NCBI GenBank assembly: GCA_002269645.1 | Contig: NIVC01001833.1 | Coordinates: forward strand, 124,001 to 188,000 | Length of the DNA: 64,000 nucleotides | Direction of reading: 5' to 3' | DNA from: Macrostomum lignano | Taxonomy: Eukaryota | In this document: positions 2,426 through 33,906 of the stretch, in pieces | How positions within the stretch are numbered: the stretch's first letter is position 1 | Layout of the letters: each line of letters opens with the position of its first letter | Program-made: the position numbers and the translations under genes | Notes under the pieces: model-generated | Told to the model about the DNA's origin: nothing | The model's database searches: none | The model's input: the letters and a program-made list of their open reading frames with translations, nothing else

Positions 2426-2684
2426 TTCACGGGCTTCTAAGCGCTAATATCAAACACTGCATTCATGTTTGCGACGTCGAAGTTCTATTAAGAACGATTA
2501 TGAATCTGTATTTTGTTTGCTTTTTCTCTTATTAAATGATCTAATCTTTTTGATAATATTGATTAATTTTTACTGGATTGAAAATTCAGCCGCTTGCTTT
2601 TGTATTTTTTCAAAGTTCGAAAGTATTAGGCAAGCTTTTATGGCTTTTTGTCATTCATTAGGTTATTTAATAGTTCTTTCCTTG

Positions 2685-3480
2685 GGTCATACAGTAGCTC
2701 AAAGAGTAGATCATGCACTGGGTCATACAGCAGGTTATACAGTAGCTCAAAGTAGATCATGCAGTGGGTCATACAGCTGCTCATATAGGGTCATACAGTA
2801 GCTCATACAGCAGGTCATACAGTAGTTCATACAGTAGCTCATATAGGGTCATACAGCAGCTCTTATAGGGTCATTCAGCTCATACAGTAGCTCATACAGT
2901 AGTTCATACAGTAGCTCATATAGGGTCATACAGCAGGTCATACAGTAGCTCATACAGCAGGTCATACAGTAGCTCATATAGGGTCATACAGTAGCTCATA
3001 CAGCAACTCATATAGGGTCATACAGTAGCTCATACAGCAACTCTTATAGGGTCATACAGTAGCTCATACAGCAACTCTTATAGGGTCATTCAGCTCATAC
3101 AGTAGCTCATACAATAGTTCATACAGTAGCTCATATAGGGTCATACAGCAGGTCATACAGTAGCTCATACAGCAGGTCATACAGTAGCTCATATAGGGTC
3201 ATACAGTAGCTCATACAGCAACTCATATAGGGTCATACAGTAGCTCATACAGCAACTCATATATGGTCATACAGTAGCTCATACAGCAACTCATATAGGG
3301 TCATACAGCAGGTCATACAGTAGCTCATACAGCAGGTCATACAGTGGCTCATATAGGGTCATACAGTAGCTCATACAGCAACTCATATAGGGTCATACAG
3401 TAGCTCATACAGCAACTCATATATGGTCATACAGTAGCTCATACAGCAACTCATATAGGGTCATACAGCAGGTCATACAG
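2685..3480. repeat. Compound minisatellite of TCATACAGTAGC (12 bp) and TCATATAGGG (10 bp) units
   Basis: Directly visible tandem array between ZNF511 and the orphan ORF. Confidence 0.9.
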
Positions 3481-3608
3481 TTCCAAAGCAGGCACAAGCT
3501 CGCACGGGTATGCACAACACTTGCTTACTTTAAAAATGACAAATTCTAGGGTCTAAATTCGCTAATGTTGGCATTTCTGCGGTGCAAACAGGCCAAACAC
3601 TAGTCAGC

Positions 3609-4072
3609 ATGTCAGAAGACTCCGACTCTCCTAGACCAAAACGCCGCTGCCTGAAATGCGGCATTGAGAATTGCGAGGCCCAGATAGAAATTGCAATTCT
3701 GATAATAATTTATGCTCTACTCATGCTACTGATGAGTATAATAAACGATTATTACGCGCTAAAATGCAAACAATGGAAAATTTAGAAAAGATTCGATCAA
3801 TAACTGGGGATTTTGAGACTCAGCGACAGTCTCTACTAGCTGAGCAGCAGTCGCTGCAGCAACAGGTTGAGTCTACTGGAGCAGCTTTCGACTCTGCAAT
3901 TGCAACAATTGTCCAGTTCCGTGCTCAATTTCGTCAGGCTGCAGGTTCGATGACGCCCGAGAATAGGGCGGCGGCTGTTGAGCAGTTGCGACAATTGCAA
4001 GCTAATATTGATGCTCACATGGGTAATGTAATGCGCGAAGCTGGATTATCTGATGATGGAGCTAATGCTTAA
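3609..4072 (+). CDS. Orphan Cys-rich + coiled-coil protein, apparently split by a 1-nt frameshift near 3670-3680
   Basis: ATG 3609 follows an acceptor-like TGCAAACAG (3590) and gives MSEDSDSPRPKRRCLKCGIENC. The overlapping frame (3671-4072) gives GPDRNCNSDNNLCSTH followed by a Q/A/E-rich helical region. No family recognised. Confidence 0.45.
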
Positions 4073-4114
4073 CTTTATATGTCCCTAGCGACTCTTGTGA
4101 CTTTAATGACTCAA

Positions 4115-4350
4115 TAGTAATAGTACAATCTGAAGGCTGCGTACGACTGTTCAGTCCAAGGACGGGGGGTCGCCACACACAGCCTCAATTACCCCAGCTA
4201 ATGCTGGCACCCATTTTACAGCTGAGTGAACTGAAGCAATGCAGAGTTGAATAATTTCTTAATCAAGGACACAAATTGTTCCGAGTGGGATCGGGAATCG
4301 AACCCCCGACCTTCAAGTCGCGAGTCCAACGCTCTGACCACTGGGCTACG
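4115..4350 (-). mobile_element. tRNA-derived SINE, copy 1
   Basis: The reverse strand has A-box TAGCCCAGTGG and B-box GGTTCGATTCC, then a body with GTGTCCTTGA...CTTCAGTTCACTCAGCTGTAAAATGGG (CORE/MIR-like motif). About 200 bp are clearly homologous to 36617-36818. Confidence 0.85.
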
Positions 4351-5389
4351 ACTCAGATGACTATTGAGTCACGAGCGCATCACGTGAGTTGCAGTTGCGG
4401 AATCATAAAAAATCGTCCAAAAGTCGTTGTGTTAGCGCTTAACTTTCTACTGACTAAAGTAGACTAAGTAGAGTTGTTAGAATATCGATGTGAAATGCGA
4501 TTCTAATTCATAAAGTCACCCGGCAGCTCAGTGATTCTACAGCAACTCTGGCGCCGCTTTAGATACTGGGAGTCGTTTAGGGTCGCATAGGGTCGATTCT
4601 TTCCTATTTCTAGGCCTTAGGTACCGTTTTCATTGGGCAGCGTCAAACGTTTGTTAATTAGATGACGAGGCGATTGTTTACTATATTACATAGATAGTTA
4701 CTCATGCCGTTTACCCTACGCTGTCGCTATACGCTACAACTTAGCAAAGTTAGATACCAAAACGTTTTTTACTTTGCTCAATTCAAGCACTACTGTTAGT
4801 AGTACGAGAGACGAAACACGTTAAAATTATTGATTATAAAAATTATAAAATATTATTTCACAGGCTTAGTTAATGTAGCTAATTCACATTTTAAAATAAA
4901 ATCAAGCTTTAAAAAGTAATTATAAAACAGTCTGTATTCCATTCCATGCATCTTTGACGTTACAATACAACTGTTTGTGTTGTTATTATTTGTTATTGAA
5001 AGTACTGTTTTTATATAGCATGCATTATGTGTGCATACACCAGATTGTTTTGTATTGTTTTGCATCTTTCATTTTTTTTAATTTTATTTAACTGTGAAAT
5101 GAAGCTCATTTCAATCATATAGTTATGAACTTAATTTACTTTTAATTTAATAATATACAAAGCGTTATTGCTTGATGTCAGATGCACTTTATATCTATTA
5201 ATCATAGGTAATATTTGTTTTAGAATTCAAAAGTAAGGAACCAATTTTTTTATGGATTTTTTAAAAAATATATCAGCTTTTGTTTGTTTTAGCTCGTGTT
5301 TTATTCACCTGTATTTTTGTTGTATTACATTTTAAGAAAATCAATAATTCCTAAAGTAATTCCCAAACTCTAAGATTCAATCGTAATTC

Positions 5390-5805
5390 TTCTTTGATCC
5401 ATGATTCCCCAGTAATCCATAGTTTCCCAATAATCCATAATTCCCCAATAATCCATAGTTCCCTAGTAATCCATAATTCCCCAATAATCGAAAGTTCCCT
5501 AGTAATCTATAATTCCCTAGTAATCCATAATTCCCTAGTAATCCATAATTCCCTAGTAATCCATAATTCCCTAGTAATCCATAATTCCCTAGTAATCCAT
5601 AATTCCCTAGTAATCCATAATTCCCTAGTAATCCATAATTCCCTAGTAATCCATAATTCCCCAATAATCCATAATTCCCCAGTAATCCATAATTCCCCAA
5701 TACCCCATAATTCTCCAATAATCCATAATTCCCCAATACCCCATAATTCCCCAATGATCCATAATTCCCCAATAATCCATAATTCCCTAATCATCCATAA
5801 TCCCA
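5390..5805. repeat. 18-bp minisatellite (CCCTAGTAATCCATAATT)
   Basis: Tandem array upstream of UBXN11; explains ORFs 5377-5772, 5394-5861 and 5507-5806. Confidence 0.92.
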
Positions 5806-5958
5806 ACGAGATCTGTAGTTCTTCTGATTTAAAGTTCCCTTCTATAGATTCGTCACCCTAAAAATATTTTGCTTAAAAACCCTCGAGGTCATCTGTGACA
5901 TCCCATCTGGTGCATTAGCAGCCTACCGTAACCCAATATTTGCAGACTGCCAACAACC

Positions 5959-8189
5959 ATGAGCGGCCCAATGTCTTCGCTCAACAAATCGCGTCGAATG
6001 CCGTTTAAACCGCCATCGAATCCGAATTTTGGCGGCGCTAACAATAACATCAATACTACTCATAGCAACAGTAGTAGAAGTAGTAGTAGGCAGTCCAGCG
6101 ATTTGACAACTGAAACAGGCGGTGGCGATTCTAAGAGGTCTTCGCCTCGGCTGCCCCCAATGTCTTCTTTATCCACTATTGACGACAAGAGTCTGGGCTC
6201 GCCGACATCTGCAAATACTGCGGAAGACGATTCAGAGTTGCTTAAATTAGCCAACGAAGTTCTTGACGACGAAGTCAGTCGTAGAATGCGACGCGATAGG
6301 CAGAAGCGCGAAACTGCGACAGTGAAATCTGCTGATAGACCGCCGAGTGCCCGGGGGAACAGCGACGCAGACCTGCTGACCACTGCCGTCAGCCGGGTGG
6401 GAGCTCTTGAACGGCTGTGCAAGGAGCAGCGGGAGGAGCTGAGCCGGCGGCAGCGAAGGATCGACGTGCTAGAGGATAAGGTCTGTCTTGGTTTTCAGCT
6501 GCCCTCCCAGATCCTCAGTTGCTGGGCCAGTGTCCCAGATCCTCAGTTGCTGGGCCAGCCTCCGAGATCTTCAGTTGCTGGGCCAGCCTCCCAGATCCTC
6601 AGTTGCTGGGCCAGCCTCCCAAATCCTCAGTTGCTGGGCCAGTGTCCCAGATCCTCAGTTGCTGGGCCAGCCTCCCAAATCCTCAGTTTCTGGGCCATCC
6701 TCCCAAATCCTCAGTTGCTGGGCCATCCTCCCAGATCCTCAGTTTCTGGGCCAGTCTCCCAGATTCTCAGTTGCTGGGCCATCCTCCCAGATCCTCAGTT
6801 TCTGGGCCAGCCTCCCAGATCCTCAGTTGCTGGGCCAGCCTCCCAGATCCTCAGTTTCTGGGCCAGCCTCCCAGATCTTCAGTTGCTGGGCCAGCCTCCC
6901 AGATCCTCAGTTGCTGGGCCAGCCTCCCAGATCCTCAGTTTCTGGGCCAGTCTCCCAGATCCCAGACAGCTGCATGTTTACATAAATCAATAGCAGCATT
7001 CGCCAGTCACCCAGGTTATAGTCAGTAACACCAATTGTGTTGTGCACAATTCACTCAGGTTCGCCTTCTGACCACAGCCGCTGGCGCAGCCAAAGGCAGC
7101 TCCAGAGAAGTGGACTCTCTGCGATCGCGCTGCCGGGAACTGCAAAAGCAAGTTCACGAGATGGAGAATTTCTTAGCCGATTACGGATTAATCTGGGTTG
7201 GAGAAGATGACGCAGATGAGGCTGGCAGCAATGAAAGTGATGAGGCTGCCAACTGGAACTGGGATCCCAGCAGTTTCTGGCGTCCCAAAGATTCCACATC
7301 AACCGATGCAGCTGACAGCATTGAGACTACTCCAAACTTTTTCAATCGTCTATTAGAATGCATCGGGGAATTGAATCGTCTGGTTGGCGAGGACGAACTG
7401 CAAGTGACCAAAACTGGCACTGGAGCTAAACTAGCCAGACAAAAGTTGGAGTCTGCTATACCTTTATCAGTGTACGCCAATGGTCTGGCTCTGTGGGACG
7501 GTCCGTTTCGATTGTACACCGAGCCGTCCACTAGGCAGCTGGTTGCGGACATTCTTGACGGTTATTTTCCAACAGAATTGCAGAGTCGCTATCCGGATGG
7601 CGTAGCATTTGTGGTTAACGATAGGAGAGAGGTGCAGTTTGACTCTACTAGCAGTAATAGTACACTTGGATTCGCTGGTCAAGGCCGAGTGCTGGGCGGT
7701 GGCAGCAGAGATGATCAACAACAGCAGCAGAGGCGTCAGCAGTTCTTAGGCCGTCTGCCAGCCTCGGTTGTAGCAAAATCTGGTCAGCTGGTCGATGTCC
7801 GGCAGTCAGTAGCTGATACATTAAGCGCCGGTCATGAGCAGCAACTACCAGCTCGTCAGCTGTCAAACGTGTTGATTGACGCTTCAGGCGACACCCCAGC
7901 CGATCGGGTTGCATCTGTAAAGATTCGATGCAATGTCAGACAGGCCAATGCTGGTACATATTTAATCAGATTGCCGTTTAATTCGAAAGTGTCTCAGCTA
8001 TTTAGCTTGTTGAGAGATCGGGGTGCAATGTCCAATTTAAACATTGCCAATGGCGAACAAGTTGCTCTGGTGAATGCTTATCCAAGATCTACGCTAAGTG
8101 AGGATGGCGAATCAACGGCTACTGTGGAAGAGTGCGGACTGGCACCTAATGCTACTCTGATGCTAGTTGTGCAGAAGATTAATAAGTAG
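5959..8189 (+). CDS. UBXN11: UBX domain-containing protein 11 (coiled coil + SEP + UBX), exons 5959-6480 and 7059-8189 (550 aa)
   Basis: Phase-0 GT-AG intron 6481-7058 joins LEDK|VRLL. Diagnostic QVHEMENFLADYGLIWVGE, SEP-like IPLSVYANGLALWDGPFR...DILDGYFPTELQSRYPDGV, and a C-terminal UBX ending AYPR...CGLAPNATLML. Confidence 0.92.
6500..6965. repeat. 28-bp minisatellite (CCCAGATCCTCAGTTGCTGGGCCAGCCT) in the UBXN11 intron
   Basis: Tandem units with an internal CCCAG/CTGGG inverted repeat; read-through ORFs show a 28-aa period. Confidence 0.92.
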
Positions 8190-8967
8190 TCTTGCTTGAC
8201 GATTGATTGTAGTGTCATTTTTTATGATGTCGTGTTGTGAGGTGCGCCTATGATGCCTTATTTCAGGTGTATGTGTGTTTCTGTGATGCCATGTATCAAA
8301 TGATTAGTGCCTACCATCATGCAGGTATTCTGTTACTGGTGTCATGTGCTGAATGTCTGTTATGTTATTTTATGTCATGTATTGTATGCCTTATGTCATA
8401 CCATACATTGTATGTTTGTTATGTTATGTGTTGTATAATGTCATGTATAAGGCGTATATGACATTATTTTTTTGATATCCGTTATTTGATTTTATTTTTT
8501 ATGTATATTTGCCGACATCTGACGCATGTTTAAATCACAGTATGTCCTGGTTTTAAATGTCATGTATACATGTGTCTATAGTATTTAACGTACGATATGA
8601 ATATCTATCTAATAAAGAATCTCAAAAATGTAATAAATTGCAAATTATATAAGCATGCTACTCGTTAGTTCCACCTGAGGTTTTTTCAAAGTTTTTTGAG
8701 ATTTTAATTAGATTCTGATAATAATTATTACTGTATTTGCAATTAACATTAATTGCTGTGATACTATATTTGACTTTCCAACAACTGTAGTGTCTATTAC
8801 AGTAATGCTTACTGTGTAATACCATCAGTAGTCCGTCCAAAATTATTTTAAAATTTCTCTTTTTATGAAAAATTTTTCTTTGCAATTATTGTAAAATTTG
8901 CCTCAGAAAATACATCTGCAATGTTTCTTTTGTTGCTGATTAATTTCATTTTGTATGTTTTAAAATC

Positions 8968-9636
8968 TGTTATTTCCCATATATTGAGCAGTGTGTGTGT
9001 CATTTCCCATATATTGAGCAGTGTGTGTGTCATTTCCCATATATTGAGCAGTGTGTGTGTCATTTCCCATATATTGAGCAGTGTGTGTCATTTCCCATAT
9101 ATTGAGCAGTGTGTGTGTCATTTCCCATATATTGAGCAGTGTGTGTGTCATTTCCCATATATTGAGCAGTGTGTGTGTCATTTCCCATATATTGAGCAGT
9201 GTGTGTGTCATTTCCCATATATTGAGCAGTGTGTGTGTGTCATTTCCCATATATTGAGCAGTGTGTGTGTCATTTCCCATATATTGAGCAGTGTGTGTGC
9301 CATTTCCCATATATTGAGCAGTGTGTGTGTCATTTCCCATATATTGAGCAGTGTGTGTGTGTCATTTCCCATATATTGAGCAGTGTGTGTGTCATTTCCC
9401 ATATATTGAGCAGTGTGTGTGTCATTTCCCATATATTGAGCAGTGTGTGTGTCATTTCCCATATATTGAGCAGTGTGTGTGTCATTTCCCATATATTGAG
9501 CAGTGTGTGTGTCATTTCCCATATATTGAGCAGTGTGTGTGTCATTTCCCATATATTGAGCAGTGTGTGTGTCATTTCCCATATATTGAGCAGTGTGTGT
9601 GACATTTCCCATATATTGAGCAGTGTGTGTGTCATT
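8968..9636. repeat. ~30-32-bp minisatellite GTCATTTCCCATATATTGAGCA(GT)n
   Basis: Tandem array with a variable GT tract between UBXN11 and the GNAT gene. Confidence 0.93.
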
Positions 9637-9717
9637 TAGCTTATATTTTGCAGTGCATAACTGCTACTTTAAGTATCAAATAGATGTATTTTTAACGCAA
9701 TTCATGCAACACTAAGA

Positions 9718-12496
9718 ATGTCCTATCAGCTATCAACATCCCCTTTAAGTCAGCTGTTCGCTGACGCCAGCACTAAAGACAAATTTGGTAAACAGATTCG
9801 CGAGGTCATAATGCAGTATTGCTATCGGACTGGGCTGCTACCTGACGGAGCTGATGACAAAACAATTGATGCCTCAGTGGCCAGTTTGAATGAACTTGAT
9901 GAAGCCGCTAGCAGCTGGTCAAGCTTGCAGGTGCGCTAAGCTGATGTCTGCTGACTGACGCGCCACCACGACCCCCTTGACTTAGTAGTTTCTTAGAAAA
10001 GGCAGTCTTGGCATCCCTTGTTTCTCTGGGACTCTGGTTTATCCTATAATTTTTTGTTTCTTAGAAAGGCGATGTTCACTCTGCTTTTTCTTTAAAAAAT
10101 CTTTAGTTAACGTATATAGGTTTTTTACAGATTTTAATTTATCCAGCACCTGAAGTTTCTTAGAAAGACCAGTTAAGCCAGAATTTTTATTTTCTTAGAA
10201 AGGCCTTTTTTCGCTAGCTTAAACAGTTTCTTAGAAACAAAAGGCCAGTTTAGCCAGCATTTGCAGTTTCTTAGAAAAGAAAGGCCAGTTCAGCCAGCAT
10301 TTGCAGTTTCTTAGAAACAAAAGGCCAGTTCAGCCAGCATTTGCAGTTTCTTAGAAACAAAAGGCCAGTATAGCCAACATTTGCAGTTTCTTAGAAACAA
10401 AAGACCAGTATAGCCAACATTTGCAGTTTCTTAGAAACAAAAGGTCAGTTAAGCCAGAATTTACAGTTTCTAAGAAACAAAGGCCAGTTCAGCCAACATT
10501 TGCAGTTTCTTAGAAAAGAAAGGCCAGTTCAGCCAACATTTGCAGTTTCTTAGAAAAGAAAGGCCAGTTTAGCCAGTATTTGCAGTTTCTTAGAAAAGAA
10601 AAGCCAGTATAGCCAACATTTGCAGTTTCTTAAAAAGTTTCTTAGAAAGTTAAGTTTACCTCACACATGATCAGCCACTACCCCCATCCGATAACCCAGG
10701 TGTGCAGTCTGGCGGAGGTGGCTCAACCCCAGAAGCCTCTATTAGGCTGCATCATATTTTATCCAACCTACTCAACTTGGGTTGGCGGCCGGCTCAGACT
10801 GGGGCTAGTGCAGTGCGACAGCAGCCAGCAGTCAAATCAGCAGCTGCTCTATAGCCTGCTCAGATCCGTGATCTGCCGGGCGTTGGATGATGAAGATTTG
10901 CAACGGATTGAACTGCTGCATCCGGCTTCTGATGCTGCCGTATATGGACCGCTCATGCAGCTGGGGTTTGAAGATCTCACTCAGACTGAGGAGTGGCATT
11001 TTGCCAGGTGATTTCTTGAATAATAAACGCCACACCCCAGGATCAGAAACCCCACACGCCAGAATCAGAAACCCCACACCCTAGAATCAGAAACCCCACA
11101 CCCTAGAATCAGAAACACCACACCCTAGAATTAGAAACACCACACCCTAGAATCAGAAACACCACACCCTAGAATCAGAAACACCACACCCTAGAATCAG
11201 AAACCCCACACCCCAGAATCAGAAACCCCACATCCCAGAATCAGAAACCCCACATCCCAGAATCAGAAACCCCACACCCTAGAATCAGAAACCCCACACC
11301 TCAGAATCCGAAATCCCACACCCTTGAGATCCCATTATCTAACTCGAACGCACAAATCTCCCCACCACGCAGGCTGGACAGGGACGGATTGCAAAACCTG
11401 GCCGAACGTCCGGCAAAGTCCGGCATAGCTGTCCGGGCTGGCGCCGAGTCCGACTGCGCCGAAGTGATGAAGATGATTCATGGATTGGCCAGCTTTGAAA
11501 AACTTCAAGCTCAGGTGAGTTTGTTTTGGCGCCGAAATAAGATAGTAATGGCCCCAAAATTAAATAGTAATGGCCCCAAAATTAAATAGGAATGTCGCCA
11601 AAATTAGATAGGAATGGCGCCAAAATTAGATAAGAATGGCGCCAAAATAAGATAGGAATGGCGCCAAAATTATATAGGAATGGCGCCAAAATTAGATAAG
11701 AATGGCGCCAAAATAAGATAGGAATGGCGCCAAAATTAGATAAGAATGTCGCCAAAATAAGATAGGAATGGCGCCAAAATTAGATAAGAATGTCGCCAAA
11801 ATAAGATAGAAATGGCGCCAAAATTAGATAAGAATGTCGCCAAAATAAGATAGGAATGGCGCCAAAATTAGATAAGAATGTCGCCAAAATAAGATAGGAA
11901 TGGCGCCAAAATTAGATAAGAATGTCGCCAAAATAAGATAAGGAATGGCGCCAAAATTAGAAGTTAAAAGCGCGATTAAAAACTTTTTAAACTGGCGCCA
12001 AAAGCCTCACGAGACTACTTACTACTCGTGCAGCAGTAGAAATGCAAGCATTTTCATTCTAAACTATTTTCATTCCAAGGTCCGCATCAACGAGGATCAA
12101 TTGAGACGGGATATTTTTGGCGAGCGCAAATTTGCTCAACTATTCATAGCTGAGCGCTCGAATTCGGGGGAAATTCTTGGCTACGCGTTGGCATTCGACG
12201 AGTTCTGGCCCAGTGGTCGCGGAGTTTGCTTAGAAGACGTGTTCGTTCAGCCGGCGCATCGCGGCAAAGGCGTCTGTAGCGCCCTGTTCTCAGCTGTGGC
12301 TCGCGACTCGCTTTATAATCGGCGTTGCCATTTTATGAGCCTCTGTTATCTGGCTTGGAATTCCGCCGCCTTTGATGTTTACCGACACTACGGCTTTGTA
12401 GACATCACCGGCTCTGATAGCTCCAAGTCGAATGGGGCGCATTTTTTAAGATTGTCGCGCGACCAGTTCCGATCCGCGCTTGGCCGGGCTCTGTAG
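9718..12496 (+). CDS. Tandem two-domain GNAT acetyltransferase of the spermidine/spermine (SSAT/SAT1-SAT2) type, exons 9718-9930, 10700-11007, 11373-11514, 12080-12496 (359 aa)
   Basis: GT-AG introns with matching phases (0,2,0); 1080-nt CDS. The C-terminal domain is canonical (VRAGAESDCAEVMKMIHGLASFEK...LEDVFVQPAHRGKGVCSALF...WNSAAFDVYRHYG). The N-terminal domain is degenerate but alignable (CSLAE...GCIIFYPTYSTWVG...GFEDLTQTEEWHFARLD). Confidence 0.8.
10160..10650. repeat. 40-bp minisatellite (GCAGTTTCTTAGAAACAAAAGGCCAGTTCAGCCAGCATTT) in GNAT intron 1
   Basis: Visible tandem units; internal TTTCT-T-AGAAA quasi-palindrome. Confidence 0.9.
11020..11325. repeat. 22-bp minisatellite (AGAATCAGAAACCCCACACCCT) in GNAT intron 2
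   Basis: Tandem units; the same unit occurs inverted at 14285-14640. Confidence 0.9.
11540..11960. repeat. 22-bp minisatellite (GAATGGCGCCAAAATTAGATAG) in GNAT intron 3
   Basis: Tandem units, many containing GGCGCCAAAA. Confidence 0.9.
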
Positions 12497-12892
12497 TATG
12501 ATTTGGGCGCGCTGTCCTCAGTAGCCTACTGATAGTAGAAATATTGACATTTTTGTCGAATTTCTTTTCTCTCCGCTAAAAATCCTATTGACAATCAATA
12601 TAGGGTCAAATTTTCCACGTTTGTGTAGAAATTTCGATTTTCATTGTTTTGGTTTTGTTTTCAAACAGGAAAAATCTGTTTATTTTGATTTGTTATTACA
12701 TTATTGTGCAGCTTATTACTTGTTATTTCGGCTTCTAGCAGTTTAATACTGTCATTAACCTATATTAGTATTGTTCTGATTGTTTTCCATGTCAAGTAAT
12801 TTTGTTAAGGATTGGTCAGTGGCAATCAGTAATGTGCACGACTTAATTGTGCACAGCTTTTATTATGGGACCTTTTGTGCACATACTAACTC

Positions 12893-13680
12893 TCCCTCTA
12901 CCTCTACCCTCCCACTCATCCTCTCTCTCCCTCTCCCCCTCTCCGTCTCTCCCTCTCCGTCTCTCCCTCTACCTCTACCCTCCCACTCATCCTCTCTCTC
13001 CCTCTCCCCCTCTCCGTCTCTCCCCTCTCCGTCTCTCCCTCTACCTCTACCCTCCCACTCATCCTCTCTCTCCCTCTCCCCCTCTCCGTCTCTCCCCTCT
13101 CCGTCTCTCCCTCTACCTCTACCCTCCCACTCATCCTCTCTCTCCCTCTCCCCCTCTCCGTCTCTCCCCTCTCCGTCTCTCCCTCTACCTCTACCCTCCC
13201 ACTCATCCTCTCTCTCCCTCTCCCCCTCTCCGTCTCTCCCCTCTCCGTCTCTCCCTCTACCTCTACCCTCCCACTCATCCTCTCTCTCCCTCTCCCCCTC
13301 TCCGTCTCTCCCCTCTCCGTCTCTCCCTCTACCTCTACCCTCCCACTCATCCTCTCTCTCCCTCTCCCCCTCTCCGTCTCTCCCCTCTCCGTCTCTCCCC
13401 TCTCCGTCTCTCCCTCTACCTCTACCCTCCCACTCATCCTCTCTCTCCCTCTCCCCCTCTCCGTCTCTCCCCTCTCCGTCTCTCCCTCTACCTCTACCCT
13501 CCCACTCATCCTCTCTCTCCCTCTCCCCCTCTCCGTCTCTCCCCTCTCCGTCTCTCCCTCTACCTCTCCCCCTCCCTCTTACCCCTCTCTCTGTCCCTCT
13601 CCCTCTACCCTCTCTCTCCCTCTCTTCCTCACCCTCTCCCCTCTCCATCCCGCTCTCTTACCCTTTCCCCCTCTTCATCT
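12893..13680. repeat. Polypyrimidine/polypurine (CT-rich) minisatellite, ~60-bp higher-order unit
   Basis: Recurring CCTCTACCCTCCCACTCATCCTCTCTCTCCCTCTCCCCCTCTCCGTCTCT... block; source of ORFs 12780-13707. Confidence 0.9.
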
Positions 13681-14284
13681 CGCAACTTTTCCTCTAGTTT
13701 TATATAAGTGATTTCAATGTTATTTAGTATTATTTATTTACAGATATCATCTAGTATTCTTTATTAGTTAGTACTCAATTATTTCTGTAAATTTCTTGAA
13801 GCAAAATACTAACAAAAAGTTTCATAAGCGCCCAGTTGTCTGCATTCAAATAAACAGACCTTATTAATATTACTATAATTATCTTATTCTGAGCCTCTTG
13901 CAAGACGGGTGCTTTGCAGTTAATTTTTATTTTATTTTGTTTATTTTTCCTACATTTCCCCTTTTTAATTTCCGATCAGCTTACAATGATAATTATTAAA
14001 GTAATTACAATATAAGTCTGTCGTGTGATTTTCATATTTCTTATTGTCTTATTTAGTACAGCTATTAGCTTCAATATTGTCAATCCACTTAACCATTATT
14101 CATTTTATTAAATAGTTTTGTTCTTATAATAAATTTAGTCAAAGTGATTTTGGCTTTTACCTGCTAATCTTTTGCCTGTTTATGTTATATGAATCTACTT
14201 TATTCATTCAATAGGTTTTCCACAGGAGTTTTATTCTAGCTAATTTCAGTTTTAATAGGTTTTAGATGATGCTTTTCTGACTCT

Positions 14285-14640
14285 CTGTGTGGGATTTCCG
14301 ATTCTGAGGTGTGGGCTTTCTGATTCTGGGGTGTGGGGTTTCTGATTCTGTGTGGGATTTCTGATTCTGGTGTGGGCTTTCTGATTCTGAGGTGTGAGGT
14401 TTCTGATTCTGGGGTGTGGGTTTCTGATTCTGGGGTGTGGGGTTTCTGATTCAGGGGTGTGGGGTTTCTGATTCTATGGTGTGGGGTTTCTGATTCTGGG
14501 GTGTGGGGTTTCCGATTCGGAGTGTGGGGTTTCCGATTCTGGAGTGTGAGGTTTCCGATTCTGGAGTGTGGGGTTTCCGATTCGGAGTGTGGGGTTTCCG
14601 ATTCTGGAGTGAAGGTTTTCTGTGTTTGAGTGTGAGATTG
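14285..14640. repeat. 22-bp minisatellite (GGGGTTTCTGATTCTGGGGTGT), reverse complement of the GNAT intron 2 array
   Basis: Direct reverse-complement comparison with 11020-11325. Confidence 0.88.
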
Positions 14641-14748
14641 CTGTATTTGGGTGTGGGATTTCTGATTGAAGGTACTTAGAAAAGTTTCTAGATTCAGCGT
14701 GTTACACTTATTGTATTCATGCAACTGCAATCGGAGTAGTAGACCAGA

Positions 14749-15254
14749 ATGGACACTCTGGGCGGTCTGCAAGCTCTGCAAACTCTGCTGAAGCCGCCAG
14801 GCGGCGGTCAAGATGAAGACAGCGACAGCGAGTCAGAGTCGGGCGGCCAGCAGCGCAAGAATCACTACGCCAAGCTGAACCCGGGAGACATCGGCAGCAA
14901 GCCTTCGTCTGCGCCAGCTGCTGACCAGTCAGGCGACGCCGCTGCTAAACTGCCGCAGGCGAACCCCAACGATATCTGGCATCCCGACGAAATTGGCGAA
15001 GGCGAATCCGGCGTCCTTGACGACCGTCTGGACCCCCGAGCTCAGCCGGAGTACGAGATGCACTTCCGGCAGGCTGTGTCGCCTGAGGACATGTTTCTGG
15101 GCACCGGGAATAAGACTCCGGCTACCGCCAGCTGCGAGCAGATGGTGGTGAGCAGTCTTGTAGCTAACGCTGACTGCTGAGCACAGGATAGCGCAAGCCA
15201 GTACTGTACGCAGGCACTACTACTACTGCTATACTACTACTACTGATACTACTA

Positions 15255-15306
<52 letters not shown>

Positions 15307-18300
15307 TCGAATTGCTAGTGAATTAGTCCGTCAAGTTTCCCAATACCCACTCACATTGACATTGCAATGCCCACAACAAGCTGGCTCATGCATCATCTAT
15401 CAGTACGATAATTATTGTTTGATCTAGGCTAAGCGGGAAAAAAAACAATTTTGTTTCTATGTGAAAGAAACTGCGCAAAGCGCTGAACTCTCAAGCTGGA
15501 CTCAATATATATACACGGATGTTGCCTGAGCCAAAGCAAGCAAGACATCATCAGCTATGCATAGCCAATCGAGCAAAGCATTCCCTACCGATCGGCAATT
15601 GACTTTGCGTCAAAAGATTCACAAAGGCTGGCACTGGAGCAATGGAATAGGCAGCTACGGTAGCCTCTCAGATCAGAGCATAACCGACTCAGAGCTGGAT
15701 CACGTGACTAAAGTTATGAAACGTTGGGAAGCTTTGCAACTGGCTGACACGTTGCGTTTACACGGCGCCGCTCAGAGATTGCGCTGTTTAAAGAAATCTC
15801 TAGCCGGAGATGGAATCCAGTCTTGCTTGATGTGCGGCTTGAGACTGGCTAATGCGTCTCATTGCTGCTTCCCCGGCTCCTTTGCTGCTTCAGCTGGCAC
15901 CATGTGCTGTCTCTGCGGACTGCGATTCTGTGCTGACTGTCTGTGAGTACCTGCGGCAGCTCGTGCGGTTTTCTTAAAATCATCTGATTTAGCATTTACA
16001 TAATCTGACATGATTTCTCACAATCTGATATGATTTCTGACAATCCGACATGATTTCTGACAATCCGACATGATTTCTGACAATCCGTCATGATTTCTGA
16101 CAACTTGACTTGATTTCTGACAATCTGACATGATTTCTGACAATCTGATATGATTTCTGACAATCTGACATGATTTCTGACAATCTGATATGATTTCTGA
16201 CAATCTGACATGATTTCTGACAATTTGATATGATTTCTGACAATCTGACATGATTTCTGACAATCTGACATGATTTCTGACAATTTGACATGATTTCTGA
16301 CAATCTGACATGATTTCTGACAATCTGACATGATTTCTGACAATTTGACATGATTTCTGACTATATAACACGATAACTGACACTCTGACACATTAGTTGA
16401 CAATCTGACACAGTTGTTGACAATCTGACACAGTTGTTGACAATCTGACACAGTTGCTGACAATCTGACACAGTTTTTGACAATCTGACACGGTTGTTGA
16501 CAATCTGACAATCTGACAGTCTGACAATCTGACACAGTTGTTGACAATCTGAAACAGTTGCTGACAATCTGACACAGTTGTTGACAATCTGACACAGTTG
16601 TTGACAATCTGACACATTAGTTGACAATCTGACAGTTGCTGACAATCTGACACAGTTGTTGACAATCTGACAATCTGACAGTCTGACAATCTGACACAGT
16701 TGTTGACAATCTGACACAGTTGTTGACAATCTGACACAGTTGCTGACAATCTGACACAGTTGTTGACAATCTGACACAGTTGCTGACAATCTGACACAGT
16801 TGCTGACAATCTGACACAGTTGTTGACAATCTGAAACAGTTGCTGACAATCTGACACAGTTGCTGACAATCTGACACAGTTGTTGACAATCTGACACAGT
16901 TGCTGACAATCTGACACAGTTGCTAACAATCTGACACAGTTGTTGACAATCTGACACAGTTGCTGACAATCTGACACAGTTGTTGACAATCTGACACAGT
17001 TGTTGACAATCTGACACAGTTGCTGACAATCTGACACAGTTGCTGACAATCTGACACAGTTGTTGACAATCTGACACAGTTGTTGACAATCTGACACAGT
17101 TGCTGACAATCTGACACAGTTGCTGACAATCTGACACAGTTGTTGACAATCTGATACAGTTGCTGACAATCTGACACAGTTGTTGACAATCTGACACAGT
17201 TGCTGACAATCTGACACAGTTGTTGACAACCTGATACGATTTGTGACACTTGAAGTCCTGACAGTTTGCCACAGATATTCTCAGTCAAGCGCTACTCAAC
17301 CACACATGCCAGACCGCCTAAGGAAGATTCTCCAGCATCCACTCCATCCTGGAGCTCCACAGCCAGCTCCAACGCTGCCACCGCATCACCTCTAGCCGAG
17401 AAGGCCTGCCATTGCGCCAAGAAGCTGGTCTGCGAAGTTTGCCTACAAAGAAACCGGTTGCAGACAGAATCGGGCAGTTGGTGGCAAAACAATTCCGGCG
17501 CGATTTCGTCGGTTGTTGATAAGAAAATCTCTGTAACCGCCTGTCCCACAGCTGTGTCGCAAATGCCCAGTGTGAAGAAGTCAGACAGCTCCAAGTTGAA
17601 CAGATTCGGGACAAGATCGGCGAGTGTCAGCTGCTACTGCTGTATTGGCAGCGCTCTGGCAATGCGCAGGGCTGGTCTGCCCAAACTGAAGCTAATTAGG
17701 CCTGTTTTAACCGATTGAGACACGAACTGAATTATGCTTTATCGATAATAAATTAACAGATCGTGCTGCTAAGACTGTTAGCGAGAGTTTTTGTCTTCCT
17801 TGCTGGTCTTGCTGTTTTCCTATCTTATGGTATTCCAGGTGCTATTCTTGTGCACTGATAATCGACCTTTTGTTCATTTCAACCTGAGAATTCCCTTCAG
17901 TCTTACCTGAGAATCTCCTTCAATCTCACATGTGAATCGGCCCTCAATCTCACATGTGAATCGGCCCTCAATCTCACCTCTGAGAATCGCCCCTCAATCA
18001 TCTCACCTAAGAATCGCCCTGAATCTCACCTCTGAGAATCGCCCCTCAATCTCACCTCAGAATCGCCCCTCAATCATCTCACCTAAGAATCGCCGCTCAA
18101 TCTCACCTAAGAATTGCCCCTCAATCATCTCACCTAAGAATCGCCCTCAATCTCACCTCTGAGAATCGCCCCTCAATCATCTCACCTAAGAATCGCCACT
18201 CAATCTCACCTAAGAATCGCCCCTCAATCATCTCACCTAAGAATCGCCCTGAATCTCACCTCTGAGAATTGCCCCTCAATCTCACCTCTGAGAATCGCCC

Positions 18301-19254
18301 CTCAATCTCACCTCTGAGAATCGCCCCTCAATCATCTCACCTAAGAATCGGCCCTCAATCTCACCTTTGAGAATCGCCCCTCAATCTCACCTCTGAGAAT
18401 CGCCCCTCAATCTCACCTCAGAATCGCCCCTCAATCATCTCACCTAAGAATCGGCCCTCAATCTCACCTTTGAGAATCGCCCCTCAATCTCACCTCTGAG
18501 AATCGCCCCTCAATCTCACCTCAGAATCGCCCCTCAATCATCTCACCTAAGAATCGCCGCTCAATCTCACCTAAGAATTGCCCCTCAATCATCTCACCTA
18601 AGAATCGCCCTCAATCTCACCTCTGAGAATCGCCCCTCAATCATCTCACCTAAGAATCGCCACTCAATCTCACCTAAGAATCGCCCCTCAATCATCTCAC
18701 CTAAGAATCGCCCTCAATCTCACCTCTGAGAATCGGCCCTCAATCTCACCTCTGATAATCGCCCCTCAATCTCACCTCTGATAATCGCCCCTCAATCCCA
18801 CCTGAGAATCGGCTCTCAATTTCATTTGAGAATCGTCGTTCAATCTCACCTGAGAATCGGCCCTCAATCTCACCTCCTAGAATCGCCCCTCAATCTCACC
18901 TGAAGATCGGTAAAGAGAAGCCTTTTTAAATCTACAACATTTTAGCTTACCAAAGTTCGTGCTGCATTCACTACTAGTTTAGCCAACAATTTCAGTAGTA
19001 ACGCACGCACATCTTCACCCCCCTTCTCCTCCGCGCAGATCAGCATTAAACTGCCTGGCACAAAATCTGCTAACGAATTAAACTTGGACATTCGCGAGAA
19101 ATTTCTTGACCTTCGTTCGGCTCGTTACCGGCTGGGTTTGCACCTGCCCAATGCGGTGGACCCAGATTCGGGTAGCGCCAAATTCGACTGCGACTCTGCC
19201 AGCCTAACTATCATTCTCAACAATAAGCGGGAGTATGACTTTGTTAATTTTTAG
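14749..19254 (+). CDS. DNAAF6: Dynein axonemal assembly factor 6 (PIH1D3), exons 14749-15147 and 19039-19254 (204 aa)
   Basis: Exon 1 has IWHPDEI...DPRAQPEYEMHFRQAVSPEDMFLG...KTPATASCEQMV. Exon 2, absent from the ORF track, reads ISIKLPGTKSANELNLDIREKFLDLRS...LHLPNAVDPDSGSAKFD...LTIILNNKREYDFVNF*, the CS/PIH-type C-terminus. Phase-0 GTGAGC...GCGCAG intron; AATAAA at 19421. Confidence 0.92.
15213..15306. repeat. (CTA)n microsatellite
   Basis: Near-perfect trinucleotide run early in the DNAAF6 intron. Confidence 0.95.
15557..17718 (+). CDS. RPH3AL: Rabphilin/Noc2 (RPH3AL)-like Rab effector: Rab-binding helix + FYVE-type Zn finger, no C2 domains; exons 15557-15942 and 17265-17718 (279 aa); nested in the DNAAF6 intron
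   Basis: FPTDRQLTLRQKIHKGW resembles the CPNDRQLALRAKL..GW motif; GDGIQSCLMCG; four CxxC pairs (CLMC, CCLC, CADC, CEVC); SGSWW resembles the SGAWF Rab-binding motif. Phase-2 intron GTGAGT...CTGACAG; 840-nt CDS; AATAAA at 17747. The symbol denotes architecture, not proven orthology. Confidence 0.8.
15995..17235. repeat. Two adjacent related 20-bp minisatellites (GACAATCTGACATGATTTCT then GACAATCTGACACAGTTGTT) filling the nested gene's intron
   Basis: Visible tandem units, with a switch of unit type near 16370. Confidence 0.93.
17905..18905. repeat. 24-27-bp minisatellite (AATCGCCCCTCAATCTCACCTCTGAG-like) in the DNAAF6 intron
   Basis: Reverse complement of the 21050-22600 unit. Confidence 0.92.
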
Positions 19255-19494
19255 CATCAGTTTTCTTGTTAGAACACATTCCAATTGTGAGTAGGCTGTG
19301 CCGAATATCCGTCCAATATAATTATGTACTCAAATTATTGCTTGCATTCACGCGGATGTGTCTTAATAAAGCTTTACCGTGTGCCTTTTCTGATGAAAAT
19401 ATGTTTTGTTTCATATTACTAATAAAAATAGTCATTCTTTTCGAATTTGTTATTTTGTCAATCATAATGTGAATCACATGACTTGATTCAACGA

Positions 19495-19700: not shown

Positions 19701-20429
19701 CTCCATTCACACTATATTGGCTCTAGTTAGTGACTAGATCAGTGACTATAGAATCGCAGCTAACCTCTCACTAATGCTGAATGAGACACTTCAGTCTGGT
19801 TAAATAATTAATAGCTAGCATTTAGCCAGAAATCTTTCACCTGGCCTGGGCAGTGAGTGCTTGATAAGCTACCTATTTGAAGAGAATTAAATGAAGCGAC
19901 ATCTTGCTAATCTCAGCGGGGGATCCTGGAATTTCAACCACTCACTCGCTCAGATTCTGTTATAGTCAAAGAGTGAGAATCGGAGAGAGTGGTTCTGCAG
20001 TTCATATCAATAATTGAACAGGTATATTTAGTGTAAAGTTGAAAGTTTTTTTGCGTCAGGCAATTAGTTATAAATTATTTCGTCCTGCATCCAACTGCGG
20101 TGCAGCTTCATCATTCTTGCCTCACTTAAGGGTGAATTTTAAGTGGAAGCTGGATCACTTGATGACGTGACACGGGAAACCCTGACGGATTGTTCAAAGG
20201 TAAAAACCTGATCCTTACTCCATACACACCAGTATATTGCACAGATAATCTTCACCTGTCTTTGCATTGTGTGCTCAGTCATGGATACTTCAAAACAGAA
20301 CTTGGGTTGCCAAGTCTTAAGTTTGTTTTTTCAGTTAGGGCAACTTTATATGAATAATATTTTACTGAATCTGTCATGATTTCGGCTTGGTCAGACCCAA
20401 GTCTTAGCATTCCAGATATTTGGATTGAG

Positions 20430-22600
20430 GTGGGCGATTCTCAAGGAAATTTAGGGGCGATTCTCAAGGAGATTTGGGGGCGATTCTCAAGGAGATTTGG
20501 GGGCGATTCTCAAGGAGATTTGGGGGCGATTCTCAAGGAGATTTGGGGGCGATTCTCAAGGAGATTTGGGGGCGATTCTCAAGGAGATTTGGGGGCGATT
20601 CTCAAGGAGATTTGGGGGCGATTCTCAAGGAGATTTGGGGGCGATTCTCAAGGAGATTTGGGGGCGATTCTCAAGGAGATTTGGGGGCGATTCTCAAGGA
20701 GATTTGGGGGCGATTCTCAAGGAGATTTGGGGGCGATTCTCAAGGAGATTTGGGGGCGATTCTCAAGGAGATTTGGGGGCGATTCTCAAGGAGATTTGGG
20801 GGCGATTCTCAAAGAAATTTGGGGCGATTCTCAAGGAGATTTGGGGGCGATTCTCAAGGAGATTTGGGGGCGATTCTCAAGGAGATTTGGGGGCGATTCT
20901 CAAAGAAATTTGGGGCGATTCTCAAGGAAATTTGGGGGCGATTCTCAAGAAGACTCGGCCGATTCTCAATTACTCTGGGCGATTCTCGAGGAGACTCTGG
21001 GAAGATTCTCAAGGAGATTCGGGGGCGATTTTCAAGAAGACTCAGGGCGATTCTAAGGTGAGATTAAGGGGTGATTCTCAGGTGAGATTGAAGAACGATT
21101 CTAAGGTGAGATTGAGGGCCGATTCTATGGTGAGATTGAGGGGCGATTCTCAGGTGAGATTGAGGGGCGGTTCTCAGGTGAGATTGAGGGCCGATTCTCA
21201 TGTGCGATTGAGGGGCGGTTCTCAGGTGAGATTGAAGAACGATTCTAAGGTGAGATTGTGGGCCGATTCTCAGGTGAGATTGAGGGGCGGTTCTCAGGTG
21301 AGATTGAGGGGCGGTTCTCAGGTGAGATTGAGGGCCGATTCTCATGTGCGATTGAGGGGCGGTTCTCAGGTGAGATTGAAGAACGATTCTAAGGTGAGAT
21401 TGTGGGCCGATTCTCAGGTGAGATTGAGGGGCGGTTCTCAGGTGAGATTGAGGGGCGGTTCTCAGGTGAGATTGAGGGCCGATTCTCATGTGCGATTGAG
21501 GGGCGGATCTCAGGTGAGATTGAAGAACGATTCTAAGGTGAGATTGTGGGCCGATTCTCAGGTGAGATTGAGGGGCGGTTCTCAGGTGAGATTGTGGGCC
21601 GATTCTCAGGTGAGATTGAGGGGCGGTTCTCAGGTGAGATTGTGGGCCAATTCTCAGGTGAGATTGAGGGGCGGTTCTCAGGTGAGATTGAGGGGCGGTT
21701 CTCAGGTGAGATTGAGGGGCGGTTCTCAGGTGAGATTGAAGAACGATTCTAAGGTGAGATTGTGGGCCGATTCTCAGGTGAGATTGAGGGGCGGTTCTCA
21801 GGTGAGATTGAGGGGCGGTTCTCAGGTGAGATTGAGGGCCGATTCTCATGTGCGATTGAGGGGCGGTTCTCAGGTGAGATTGAAGAACGATTCTAAGGTG
21901 AGATTGTGGGCCGATTCTCAGGTGAGATTGAGGGGCGGTTCTCAGGTGAGATTGAGGGGCGGTTCTCAGGTGAGATTGAGGGCCGATTCTCATGTGCGAT
22001 TGAGGGGCGGATCTCAGGTGAGATTGAAGAACGATTCTAAGGTGAGATTGTGGGCCGATTCTCAGGTGAGATTGAGGGGCGGTTCTCAGGTGAGATTGTG
22101 GGCCGATTCTCAGGTGAGATTGAGGGGCGGTTCTCAGGTGAGATTGTGGGCCGATTCTCAGGTGAGATTGAGGGGCGGTTCTCAGGTGAGATTGAGGGGC
22201 GGTTCTCAGGTGAGATTGAGGGCCGATTCTCATGTGCGATTGAGGGGCGGTTCTCAGGTGAGATTGAAGAACGATTCTAAGGTGAGATTGTGGGCCGATT
22301 CTCAGGTGAGATTGAGGGGCGGTTCTCAGGTGAGATTGTGGGGCGATTCTCAGGTGAGATTGAGGGGCGGTTCTCAGGTGAGATTGAGGGGCGGTTCTCA
22401 GGTGAGATTGAGGGGCGGTTCTCAGATGAGATTGTGGGCCGATTCTCAGGTGAGATTGAGGGGCGGTTCTCAGATGAGATTGTGGGCCGGTTCTCAGGTG
22501 AGATTGAGGGGCGGTTCTCAGATGAGATTGTGGGCCGATTCTCAGGTGAGATTGAGGGGCGATTCTCAGGTGAGATTTTGGGCCGATTCTCAGGTGAGGT
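20430..22600. repeat. Compound array: 23-bp GGGGCGATTCTCAAGGAGATTTG (20430-21050) grading into 24-bp GGGGCGGTTCTCAGGTGAGATTGA (21050-22600)
   Basis: Directly visible; source of the 701-aa and 529-aa artefactual ORFs. Confidence 0.95.

Positions 22601-23939: not shown

Positions 23940-33906
<9,967 letters not shown>

What the first reader, a model, noticed from the sequence alone, without database searches (positions are those of the whole stretch)
14749..19254. Complete Rab-effector gene nested on the SAME strand inside the single intron of DNAAF6
Seen: DNAAF6 exon 1 (to 15147) and exon 2 (from 19039) join in phase to give the full conserved protein. Between them lies a two-exon rabphilin/Noc2-like gene with its own ATG, stop, strong GTGAGT donor and AATAAA (17747). 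Known: nested genes are usually antisense to the host. Here the DNAAF6 pre-mRNA must skip a competing acceptor (17264), a competing donor (15943) and an intronic poly(A) signal. Inference: a mutually exclusive switch between a motile-cilia assembly factor and a secretory-vesicle effector, or release of the inner mRNA from the host intron by trans-splicing.
Basis: partly seen in the sequence, partly recalled or inferred. Interest (0 to 1): 0.78.

Follow-up and report, generated by a model that had tools for sequence, protein, structure and literature searches.

The report
Noc2-like gene nested inside flatworm DNAAF6
In the flatworm Macrostomum lignano, a small unannotated Rab-effector (Noc2/rabphilin-type) gene sits on the same strand inside the only intron of the cilia gene DNAAF6; this is a real but ordinary host/nested gene pair, and nothing supports a special switching or trans-splicing mechanism.

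Summary
The window is Macrostomum lignano scaffold NIVC01001833.1. Joining 14749-15147 to 19039-19254 gives a 204-aa protein identical to the RNA-seq-guided annotated model BOX15_Mlig019242g1, a DNAAF6/PIH1D3 orthologue.

The 3.9-kb intron holds a same-strand, two-exon ORF:
- ATG at 15557 and GTGAGT donor at 15943
- acceptor AG ending at 17264, with 17312 as an alternative
- stop at 17716-17718 and AATAAA at 17747

The ORF encodes a rabphilin/Noc2-type Rab-binding domain without C2 domains. All eight zinc-ligand cysteines, the N-terminal PxDRQLxLRxKxxxGW motif and an SGSWW motif are present.

The arrangement recurs at three loci of the assembly, so it is not a misjoin. It predates the split of the diverged third locus (DNAAF6 dS 0.11). 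The host intron is an ancient phase-0 intron shared with an oyster and a liver fluke, which carry no nested gene there.

Function of the inner gene is not proven. It is unannotated, its omega against the diverged copy is about 1, and that copy carries a 2-nt insertion beside the proposed acceptor. I could reach no RNA data. Same-strand nested genes are a known class (about 29% of Drosophila nested genes). The switch and trans-splicing ideas are untested, and the second is disfavoured. Low interest.

The parts
14749..15147 (+). DNAAF6 (PIH1D3) coding exon 1, 133 codons, ends in phase 0; GTGAGC donor at 15148
   Evidence: The join is 100% identical to BOX15_Mlig019242g1/g2. Best named homologues are 'dynein axonemal assembly factor 6-like' (50% identity over 99% of the length).
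15148..19038 (+). DNAAF6 intron (3891 nt), at an ancient phase-0 intron position; holds the nested gene plus three tandem-repeat arrays
   Evidence: The same phase-0 position (after ...SCExxV) occurs in Saccostrea echinata and Opisthorchis felineus DNAAF6.
15307..15556 (+). Conserved 250-nt block upstream of the inner ATG, a putative promoter/5' UTR; TATATATA at 15506-15513
   Evidence: About 97% identical to the diverged copy L005 apart from four short indels. Promoter function is inferred, not shown.
15557..15942 (+). Inner Noc2/rabphilin-like gene, coding exon 1: N-terminal motif, helix alpha1 and Zn ligands Cys1-6
   Evidence: tblastn homology to Noc2/rabphilins stops at 15940-15943, which is where the donor lies.
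15943..17264 (+). Inner gene intron (GTGAGT...CAG), almost entirely a 20-nt minisatellite (16002-17248, 62 copies). May extend to 17312 if the alternative acceptor is used.
17265..17718 (+). Inner gene coding exon 2: loop insertion, Zn ligands Cys7-8, helix alpha2 with SGSWW, an unconserved tail, and TGA stop at 17716-17718
17747..17752 (+). AATAAA poly(A) signal of the inner gene
   Evidence: Conserved in L005. Similarity between the two copies collapses about 25 nt downstream of it.
17882..18901 (+). 26-nt minisatellite filling the 3' part of the host intron. Its reverse complement forms a 2.2-kb array at 20423-22598.
19039..19254 (+). DNAAF6 coding exon 2, the second half of the PIH1_CS domain; TAG stop at 19252-19254; AATAAA at 19365-19370

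Best explanation
This is an ordinary sense-oriented host/nested gene pair in Macrostomum lignano.

DNAAF6 has lost four of the five introns seen in the oyster and fluke orthologues. It keeps one ancient phase-0 intron. That intron houses a small, fast-evolving, C2-less rabphilin/Noc2-type Rab-binding-domain gene of two exons (263-279 aa, depending on the acceptor).

The two genes most likely act as separate transcription units. The inner gene would start from its own promoter in the conserved 250-nt block upstream of its ATG and end at its own AATAAA. When DNAAF6 is transcribed, polymerase would read through the inner gene, and the whole 3.9 kb would be removed as one intron by pairing donor 15148 with acceptor 19038.

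Shown: the gene structures, the family assignments, recurrence at three loci, the ancient intron position, and the conservation pattern. Inferred: that the inner gene is expressed and functional, that it has its own promoter, and that the host simply splices over it.
For: - The DNAAF6 join equals the annotated, RNA-seq-guided protein.
- The inner ORF matches the rabphilin-3A Rab-binding domain and Noc2 proteins, with all eight Zn ligands and the family motifs.
- No C2 exons occur anywhere in the 64 kb.
- The arrangement is identical at L001 (the window), L002 and the diverged copy L005, with the same upstream neighbours.
- Both inner exons stay open in all copies. There are no indels in about 830 coding nt, against four indels in the 250 nt upstream.
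- The upstream block, donor and AATAAA are conserved, and similarity is lost just past the poly(A) signal.
- The intron position is shared with oyster and fluke.
- No terminal inverted repeats or target-site duplication flank the inner gene.
- Same-strand nested genes, typically with zero or one intron and fast-evolving, are a described class (PMC3814207).
Against: - No gene is annotated inside the intron at any of the three loci of the RNA-seq-guided GenBank annotation, and one search found no annotated protein matching it apart from one chimeric gene prediction (P0001).
- Against the diverged copy, dN = dS = 0.035 (omega 1.0), compared with omega 0.075 for DNAAF6.
- Replacements avoid family-conserved columns only weakly (3 observed against 5.7 expected, P=0.12).
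- L005 carries a 2-nt insertion that breaks the frame if the 17264 acceptor is used.
- Pfam FYVE_2 is below its threshold.
- The AlphaFold model was of low confidence.
- I could reach no RNA evidence for the inner gene.
Confidence: 0.6

Rival explanations
1. The inner ORF is a non-functional or decaying relic: a silent or barely expressed gene copy carried passively in the DNAAF6 intron. The locus then behaves as a plain two-exon DNAAF6 gene with a repeat-rich intron.
For: - Omega is about 1 between the diverged copies, with 20 amino-acid replacements.
- It is unannotated at all three loci of a transcriptome-guided annotation.
- L005 has a 2-nt insertion at the acceptor.
- Pfam is sub-threshold, with large loop insertions.
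Against: - The ORF is open in all three copies and all eight Zn ligands and family motifs are intact.
- There is no indel in about 830 coding nt, although the adjacent 250 nt carry four.
- The block is two to three times less diverged than DNAAF6 synonymous sites and the unique flanks.
- The AATAAA and donor are conserved.
- An alternative acceptor at 17312 keeps the frame in every copy.
Confidence: 0.28
2. One reading: the two genes share the DNAAF6 promoter. The primary transcript is then resolved in one of two ways. Either it is a mutually exclusive choice between intronic polyadenylation at 17747 and full splicing to 19039, or the inner mRNA is released by spliced-leader trans-splicing (a 'nested operon').
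For: - M. lignano trans-splices 30-39% of its genes, and about 7% of its transcriptional units are polycistronic precursors (PMC5730564; PMC8629364).
- The same-strand layout makes read-through unavoidable.
Against: - An acceptor with a donor upstream in cis is cis-spliced rather than SL trans-spliced (Conrad et al. 1993, as quoted in PMC8629364).
- No YTNCAG SL-acceptor motif lies in 15148-15560. This is weak evidence, since only about 44% of SL sites carry the motif.
- The one conserved CAG just before the ATG (15554) would place the SL's own AUG out of frame with the ORF (sequence).
- Cis-chimeras are either truncated (151 or 135 aa) or in frame only in this copy and not in L005.
- A conserved upstream block with a TATA-like element suggests an independent start.
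Confidence: 0.08
3. Assembly artefact: a Rab-effector gene was wrongly joined between two halves of DNAAF6.
For: The region is full of minisatellites, and 56% of the window is tandem repeat.
Against: - The same order appears at three separately assembled loci that differ in repeat copy number and, for L005, by 3-17% in sequence.
- Gene predictions made on another, ParaSite-derived annotation also interleave DNAAF6 with inner-gene pieces (P0001, P0003, P0037, P0110).
- The annotated DNAAF6 model spans the region.
Confidence: 0.01

Closest known systems
Same-strand host/nested ('including/nested') protein-coding gene pairs, as catalogued in Drosophila, C. elegans and mammals
   Same: - One complete gene lies inside a single intron of another, on the same strand, with no exon overlap.
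- The nested gene is short, has only one intron and evolves fast, as described for Drosophila same-strand nested genes (PMC3814207).
- The host must splice over internal splice and poly(A) signals.
   Different: - The organism is a flatworm with widespread SL trans-splicing and a partly duplicated genome.
- The host intron is the only one the host has kept.
- Expression of the nested gene is not documented.
Rab effector Noc2 (RPH3AL) / rabphilin-3A N-terminal Rab-binding domain
   Same: - N-terminal PxDRQLxLRxKxxxGW motif and a long helix alpha1.
- FYVE-type finger with eight Cys, and a second helix ending in SG(A/S)W.
- No C2 domains, as in Noc2.
   Different: - Only 22-27% identity to family members.
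- A 10-aa insertion between Cys2 and Cys3 and a roughly 55-aa insertion between Cys6 and Cys7.
- SGSWW instead of SGAWF.
- Below the Pfam FYVE_2 gathering score.
- Orthology to Noc2 rather than to a truncated rabphilin is not resolved.
SL-resolved operons of M. lignano and nematodes
   Same: Same-strand genes that could be covered by one primary transcript, in a species where polycistronic precursors are common.
   Different: In operons the genes lie in tandem, and the downstream acceptor has no unpaired donor upstream. Here the inner gene lies between a donor and its acceptor, so the operon logic does not carry over.

Membership tests
DNAAF6 / PIH1D3 (host) | C-terminal PIH1-type CS domain in a protein of about 190-215 aa, with the best matches being DNAAF6 orthologues | tested here: met
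   PF18201 PIH1_CS scores 52.1 bits against a cutoff of 23.3. Top named hits are 'dynein axonemal assembly factor 6(-like)', 43-50% identical over 97-100% of the length.
DNAAF6 / PIH1D3 (host) | Role in axonemal dynein arm pre-assembly | not testable with these tools
   Inferred from orthology only.
Rabphilin/Noc2 Rab-binding domain (Pfam FYVE_2, RabBD) | Reaches the curated Pfam FYVE_2 gathering score | tested here: not met
   22.3-24.7 bits against 27.2. The match is split by loop insertions.
Rabphilin/Noc2 Rab-binding domain (Pfam FYVE_2, RabBD) | Significant sequence similarity to bona fide members, collinear over the whole domain | tested here: met
   1ZBD_B rabphilin-3A at E=2.7e-7, with alpha1 plus finger in exon 1 and the 'CxxC...SGxW' segment in exon 2. 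68 hits at E<=1e-3 in 1.8 billion proteins, of which the seven that carried a source name are Noc2, Rabphilin 3A-like, Rabphilin or RabBD.
Rabphilin/Noc2 Rab-binding domain (Pfam FYVE_2, RabBD) | Eight zinc-ligand cysteines (four CxxC pairs) and the SGAWF-type motif after helix alpha2 | tested here: met
   C90, C93, C117, C120, C125, C128, C185 and C188 are invariant in the alignment. The motif reads SGSWW with an invariant G199.
Rabphilin/Noc2 Rab-binding domain (Pfam FYVE_2, RabBD) | The fold: two long helices flanking a zinc finger | tested here: inconclusive
   The AlphaFold model has mean pLDDT 53.7. Helices 44-82 and 186-198 sit where expected, but the finger is not modelled. Foldseek against the PDB gave no meaningful match.
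Rabphilin/Noc2 Rab-binding domain (Pfam FYVE_2, RabBD) | GTP-dependent binding of Rab3/Rab27 | not testable with these tools
   Needs pull-down or yeast two-hybrid assays.
Noc2 subtype (as opposed to rabphilin) | No C2 domains downstream of the Rab-binding domain | tested here: met
   A stop at 17716-17718 is followed by a conserved AATAAA. tblastn with eight full-length rabphilins finds no C2 exon in the 64-kb window.
Host/nested gene pair, same strand | The nested gene lies entirely within one intron of the host, on the same strand, without exon overlap | tested here: met
   The inner gene spans 15557-17752, inside the intron 15148-19038, both on the + strand.
Host/nested gene pair, same strand | Both genes are transcribed | tested here: inconclusive
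   The host model comes from an RNA-seq-guided annotation. The inner gene is unannotated at three loci and I could reach no RNA data. The papers' supplements held no entry for it.

The most novel reading that the evidence does not exclude
In M. lignano the DNAAF6 primary transcript could be a 'nested operon'. The Noc2-like mRNA would be cut out of the host intron by SL trans-splicing and intronic polyadenylation. Each transcript would then yield either the ciliary assembly factor or the vesicle effector, and the need to keep the nested gene would explain why this is the only intron DNAAF6 retained.
Probability: 0.06. Interest if true: 0.6.

Novelty: new member of a known kind. Interest (0 to 1): 0.22.

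Why it matters
The practical gain is small.
- It adds an unannotated Noc2/rabphilin-type gene to the M. lignano gene set.
- It explains several chimeric 'DNAAF6' predictions in UniProt (A0A1I8FJP1, A0A1I8FH18, A0A1I8IWL8, A0A1I8FAU4).
- It offers a tidy example in which the sole surviving ancient intron of a gene is the one that houses another gene.

If the inner gene proves to be expressed, the pair would be a convenient, transgenesis-accessible test case for how a trans-splicing animal avoids mis-splicing and premature polyadenylation at same-strand nested genes. That problem has so far been studied mainly in flies and mammals.

Tried and rejected
- I first took the inner exon 1 to end at 15943 and join 17275. 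I rejected this because the intron would then begin with TG.
- Exact-protein look-ups for inner transcripts failed. The 129-aa exon-1 ORF and P0001 are not on record. M. lignano DNAAF6 itself has no Logan-derived record, so absence from that index says nothing about expression.
- The near-identical copy L002 has no substitutions in either gene, so it is uninformative for selection.
- Literature and supplement searches for Mlig019242, Mlig013996, RPH3AL and PIH1D3 found nothing.
- AlphaFold on a nine-sequence alignment gave a low-confidence model, and Foldseek against the PDB returned noise.
- The profile search with alignment A1 returned only vertebrate Noc2 proteins. It could not show whether M. 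lignano has a second, canonical rabphilin.
- Transposon-mediated insertion: no terminal inverted repeats or target-site duplication around the inner gene.
- No Rfam family in 12-23 kb, and no SL RNA gene in the window.
- C2-domain exons downstream, which would make the genes interleaved rather than nested: none found.
Full report
**Source of the window.** The window is from the free-living flatworm Macrostomum lignano. A locus fetched from GenBank assembly GCA_002269645.1 (scaffold NIVC01001833.1:128749-153254) is base-for-base identical to window 4749-29254. The region is extremely rich in minisatellites: TRF marks 36,084 of 64,000 nt as tandem repeat.

**The host gene.**
- The ORF starts at 14749 and runs to 15147 (399 nt, phase 0), followed by GTGAGC.
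- After CGCAG at 19038, a second ORF runs from 19039 to the TAG at 19252-19254.
- The joined 204-aa protein has a PIH1_CS domain (52 bits).
- It is 43-50% identical over its full length to proteins named dynein axonemal assembly factor 6 in molluscs, annelids and vertebrates.
- It is 100% identical to the annotated M. lignano proteins BOX15_Mlig019242g1/g2.
- That annotation was built from RNA-seq (StringTie/TACO plus SL and poly(A) read evidence; PMC5730564).
- In the oyster Saccostrea echinata and the liver fluke Opisthorchis felineus, DNAAF6 has six coding exons. One intron is a phase-0 intron at exactly this position (...SCEDMV|VKIKLPG and ...SCEFLV|ARIRLPG, against ...SCEQMV|ISIKLPG here).
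- The M. lignano gene has therefore lost the other four introns and kept this ancient one. Neither the oyster nor the fluke locus contains any rabphilin-like sequence.

**The inner gene.**
- On the same strand, an ATG at 15557 (with an in-frame stop ten codons upstream) opens a 386-nt exon ending at 15942.
- The canonical donor GTGAGT begins at 15943. The in-frame TGA at 15944-15946 belongs to that donor.
- With this phase-2 donor, the acceptor whose AG ends at 17264 joins in frame to an ORF that runs to the TGA at 17716-17718. AATAAA lies at 17747-17752.
My own first model (15943|17275) needed a non-canonical donor and was dropped.
- The 1.3-kb intron is almost entirely a 20-nt minisatellite.

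**Family of the inner protein.**
- The 279-aa product matches the Rab-binding domain of rabphilin-3A (PDB 1ZBD chain B, E=2.7e-7). Helix alpha1 and the first half of the zinc finger are in exon 1. The last CxxC pair and the 'SGxW' helix are in exon 2, in the right order.
- An exhaustive HMMER scan of 1.84 billion representative proteins gave 68 remote hits at E<=1e-3. The seven that carried a source name are Rab effector Noc2 (Geodia, Latimeria, Aplochiton, rabbit), Rabphilin 3A-like without C2 domains (carp), Rabphilin (Helobdella) and a RabBD protein (Rotaria).
- In a nine-sequence alignment, all eight zinc-ligand cysteines, the N-terminal P-x-D-R-x-x-x-L-R...G-W motif and the glycine of SGAW are invariant.
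- There are two lineage-specific loop insertions. These explain why Pfam FYVE_2 stays just under its gathering score (22-25 bits against 27.2).
- No C2-domain exon exists anywhere in the window. The protein is therefore Noc2-like rather than rabphilin-like, and the gene ends inside the host intron. It is truly nested, not interleaved.

**Not an artefact, and how old.**
- The assembly holds three copies of the locus with the same upstream neighbours (a SEP/UBX gene and a GNAT acetyltransferase gene).
- These are the window itself, a near-identical copy on NIVC01000100.1 that differs only in repeat copy number, and a diverged copy on NIVC01000327.1 annotated as Mlig013996g1.
- All three have the inner gene between the two DNAAF6 exons.
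- Several UniProt gene predictions for M. lignano (A0A1I8FJP1, A0A1I8FH18, A0A1I8IWL8, A0A1I8FAU4) are chimeras that string DNAAF6 exons together with inner-gene pieces. This is independent evidence for the same gene order.
- The nesting therefore predates the divergence of the two copies (DNAAF6 dS = 0.11).
- No terminal inverted repeats or target-site duplications flank the inner gene.

**Is the inner gene functional?** The evidence is mixed.

In favour:
- Both exons are open in all three copies, and every diagnostic residue is intact.
- About 830 coding nt carry no indel, whereas the 250 nt just upstream carry four.
- The upstream 250 nt, the donor, the AATAAA and about 25 nt beyond it are 96-97% identical between the diverged copies. 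Similarity then collapses, as expected at a real 3' end.

Against:
- Between the diverged copies dN = dS = 0.035 (omega 1.0; 21.5 non-synonymous and 6.5 synonymous changes). DNAAF6 shows dS 0.114 and omega 0.075.
- The 20 replacements avoid family-conserved columns only weakly (3 against 5.7 expected, P=0.12).
- The diverged copy has a 2-nt AT insertion right after position 17274. This puts the 17264 acceptor out of frame there. An alternative acceptor (GCCAG|A, AG ending at 17312) is in frame in all copies and shortens only the unconserved loop.
- No gene is annotated inside the intron at any of the three loci.
- I could reach no transcript data.

The uniformly low divergence at all site classes, combined with omega of about 1 and the absence of indels, is not fully explained. 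Fast protein evolution is typical of nested genes in Drosophila, especially same-strand ones (PMC3814207). I put about 0.6-0.7 on a functional, fast-evolving gene and about 0.3 on a relic.

**Mechanism.** The simplest reading has three steps.
- The inner gene has its own promoter. A conserved block with TATATATA at 15506-15513 lies 44 nt before the ATG.
- The inner gene has its own poly(A) site.
- DNAAF6 transcription reads through it and removes it as part of one 3.9-kb intron.

That is the general problem of same-strand nested genes, and it is the proposed reason for their under-representation in flies, where 71% of nested genes are opposite-strand. In mouse and human the two orientations are 'broadly similar' (PMC11694760).

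Mis-splicing of DNAAF6 exon 1 to 17265 or 17313 would give truncated 151-aa or 135-aa products. Splicing to 17275 would give an in-frame 280-aa chimera in this copy but not in the diverged copy, so I treat that as chance.

The trans-splicing idea has a real basis in the species: 30-39% of genes are SL trans-spliced, and about 7% of transcriptional units are polycistronic. It still fits the geometry poorly.
- On a host pre-mRNA, any acceptor upstream of the inner ATG has the DNAAF6 donor upstream in cis. That favours cis-splicing (the Conrad rule, quoted).
- The commonest SL-acceptor motif, YTNCAG, is absent from 15148-15560.
- The only conserved CAG next to the ATG would put the SL's terminal AUG out of frame.
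- A 'mutually exclusive switch' is neither supported nor excluded by sequence alone.

**Verdict.** The feature is a new member of a well-known class, the same-strand host/nested gene pair. It has two modest points of interest: an unannotated, divergent Noc2-like gene, and a host that kept only the intron that houses it.

Noticed in passing
window 1-64000: 56% of the window (36,084 nt) is tandem repeat. There are dozens of distinct minisatellites with 14-243-nt units, including a 9.1-kb array of a 40-mer (43525-52636) and a 5.8-kb array of a 93-mer (37145-42923). This is far above the 15% genome-wide figure reported for simple and tandem repeats.
   Followed up: partly
window 17882-18901 (+) and 20423-22598 (reverse complement): The same roughly 24-26-nt minisatellite unit (GAGAATCGCCCCTCAATCTCACCT) forms two arrays in inverted orientation that bracket DNAAF6 exon 2 and its 3' UTR. 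A read-through transcript could fold into a very long hairpin.
   Followed up: partly
window 14287-14667 (+) and 11018-11324 (reverse complement): A second inverted pair of minisatellite arrays (unit GTGTGGGGTTTCTGATTCTGGG). One sits immediately 5' of the DNAAF6 ATG and the other inside the upstream GNAT acetyltransferase gene.
   Followed up: no
window 15148-17775 compared with L005 10400-12470: The whole inner-gene block is about 3-4% diverged from the diverged copy at every class of site, with dS equal to dN. DNAAF6 synonymous sites (11%) and the unique flanks (8-17%) are much more diverged. This is possibly a gene-conversion tract, but the lack of indels in the coding part argues for constraint. 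Unexplained.
   Followed up: partly
window 14749-19254; L003, L004: M. lignano DNAAF6 kept only one of the five coding introns present in the oyster and liver-fluke orthologues, and it is the one that contains the nested gene. This fits the idea that a resident gene protects an intron from loss.
   Followed up: partly
window 25564-26988 (-): A 474-aa ORF with retroelement integrase domains (Integrase_H2C2 and rve), presumably part of an LTR retrotransposon.
   Followed up: no
window 5959-8189 and about 9733-12496 (+): Two annotated genes upstream on the same strand as DNAAF6: a SEP/UBX (p47-like) gene and a GNAT acetyltransferase gene. After subtracting repeats, the acetyltransferase-to-DNAAF6 spacer is about 1.1 kb, near the 1-kb operon threshold used for this species.
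   Followed up: no
UniProt A0A1I8FJP1, A0A1I8FH18, A0A1I8IWL8, A0A1I8FAU4 (P0001, P0003, P0110, P0037): These M. lignano database proteins are chimeric gene predictions that fuse DNAAF6 exons with frame-shifted or partial pieces of the nested Noc2-like gene. They should not be used as DNAAF6 or Arf-GAP sequences.
   Followed up: yes
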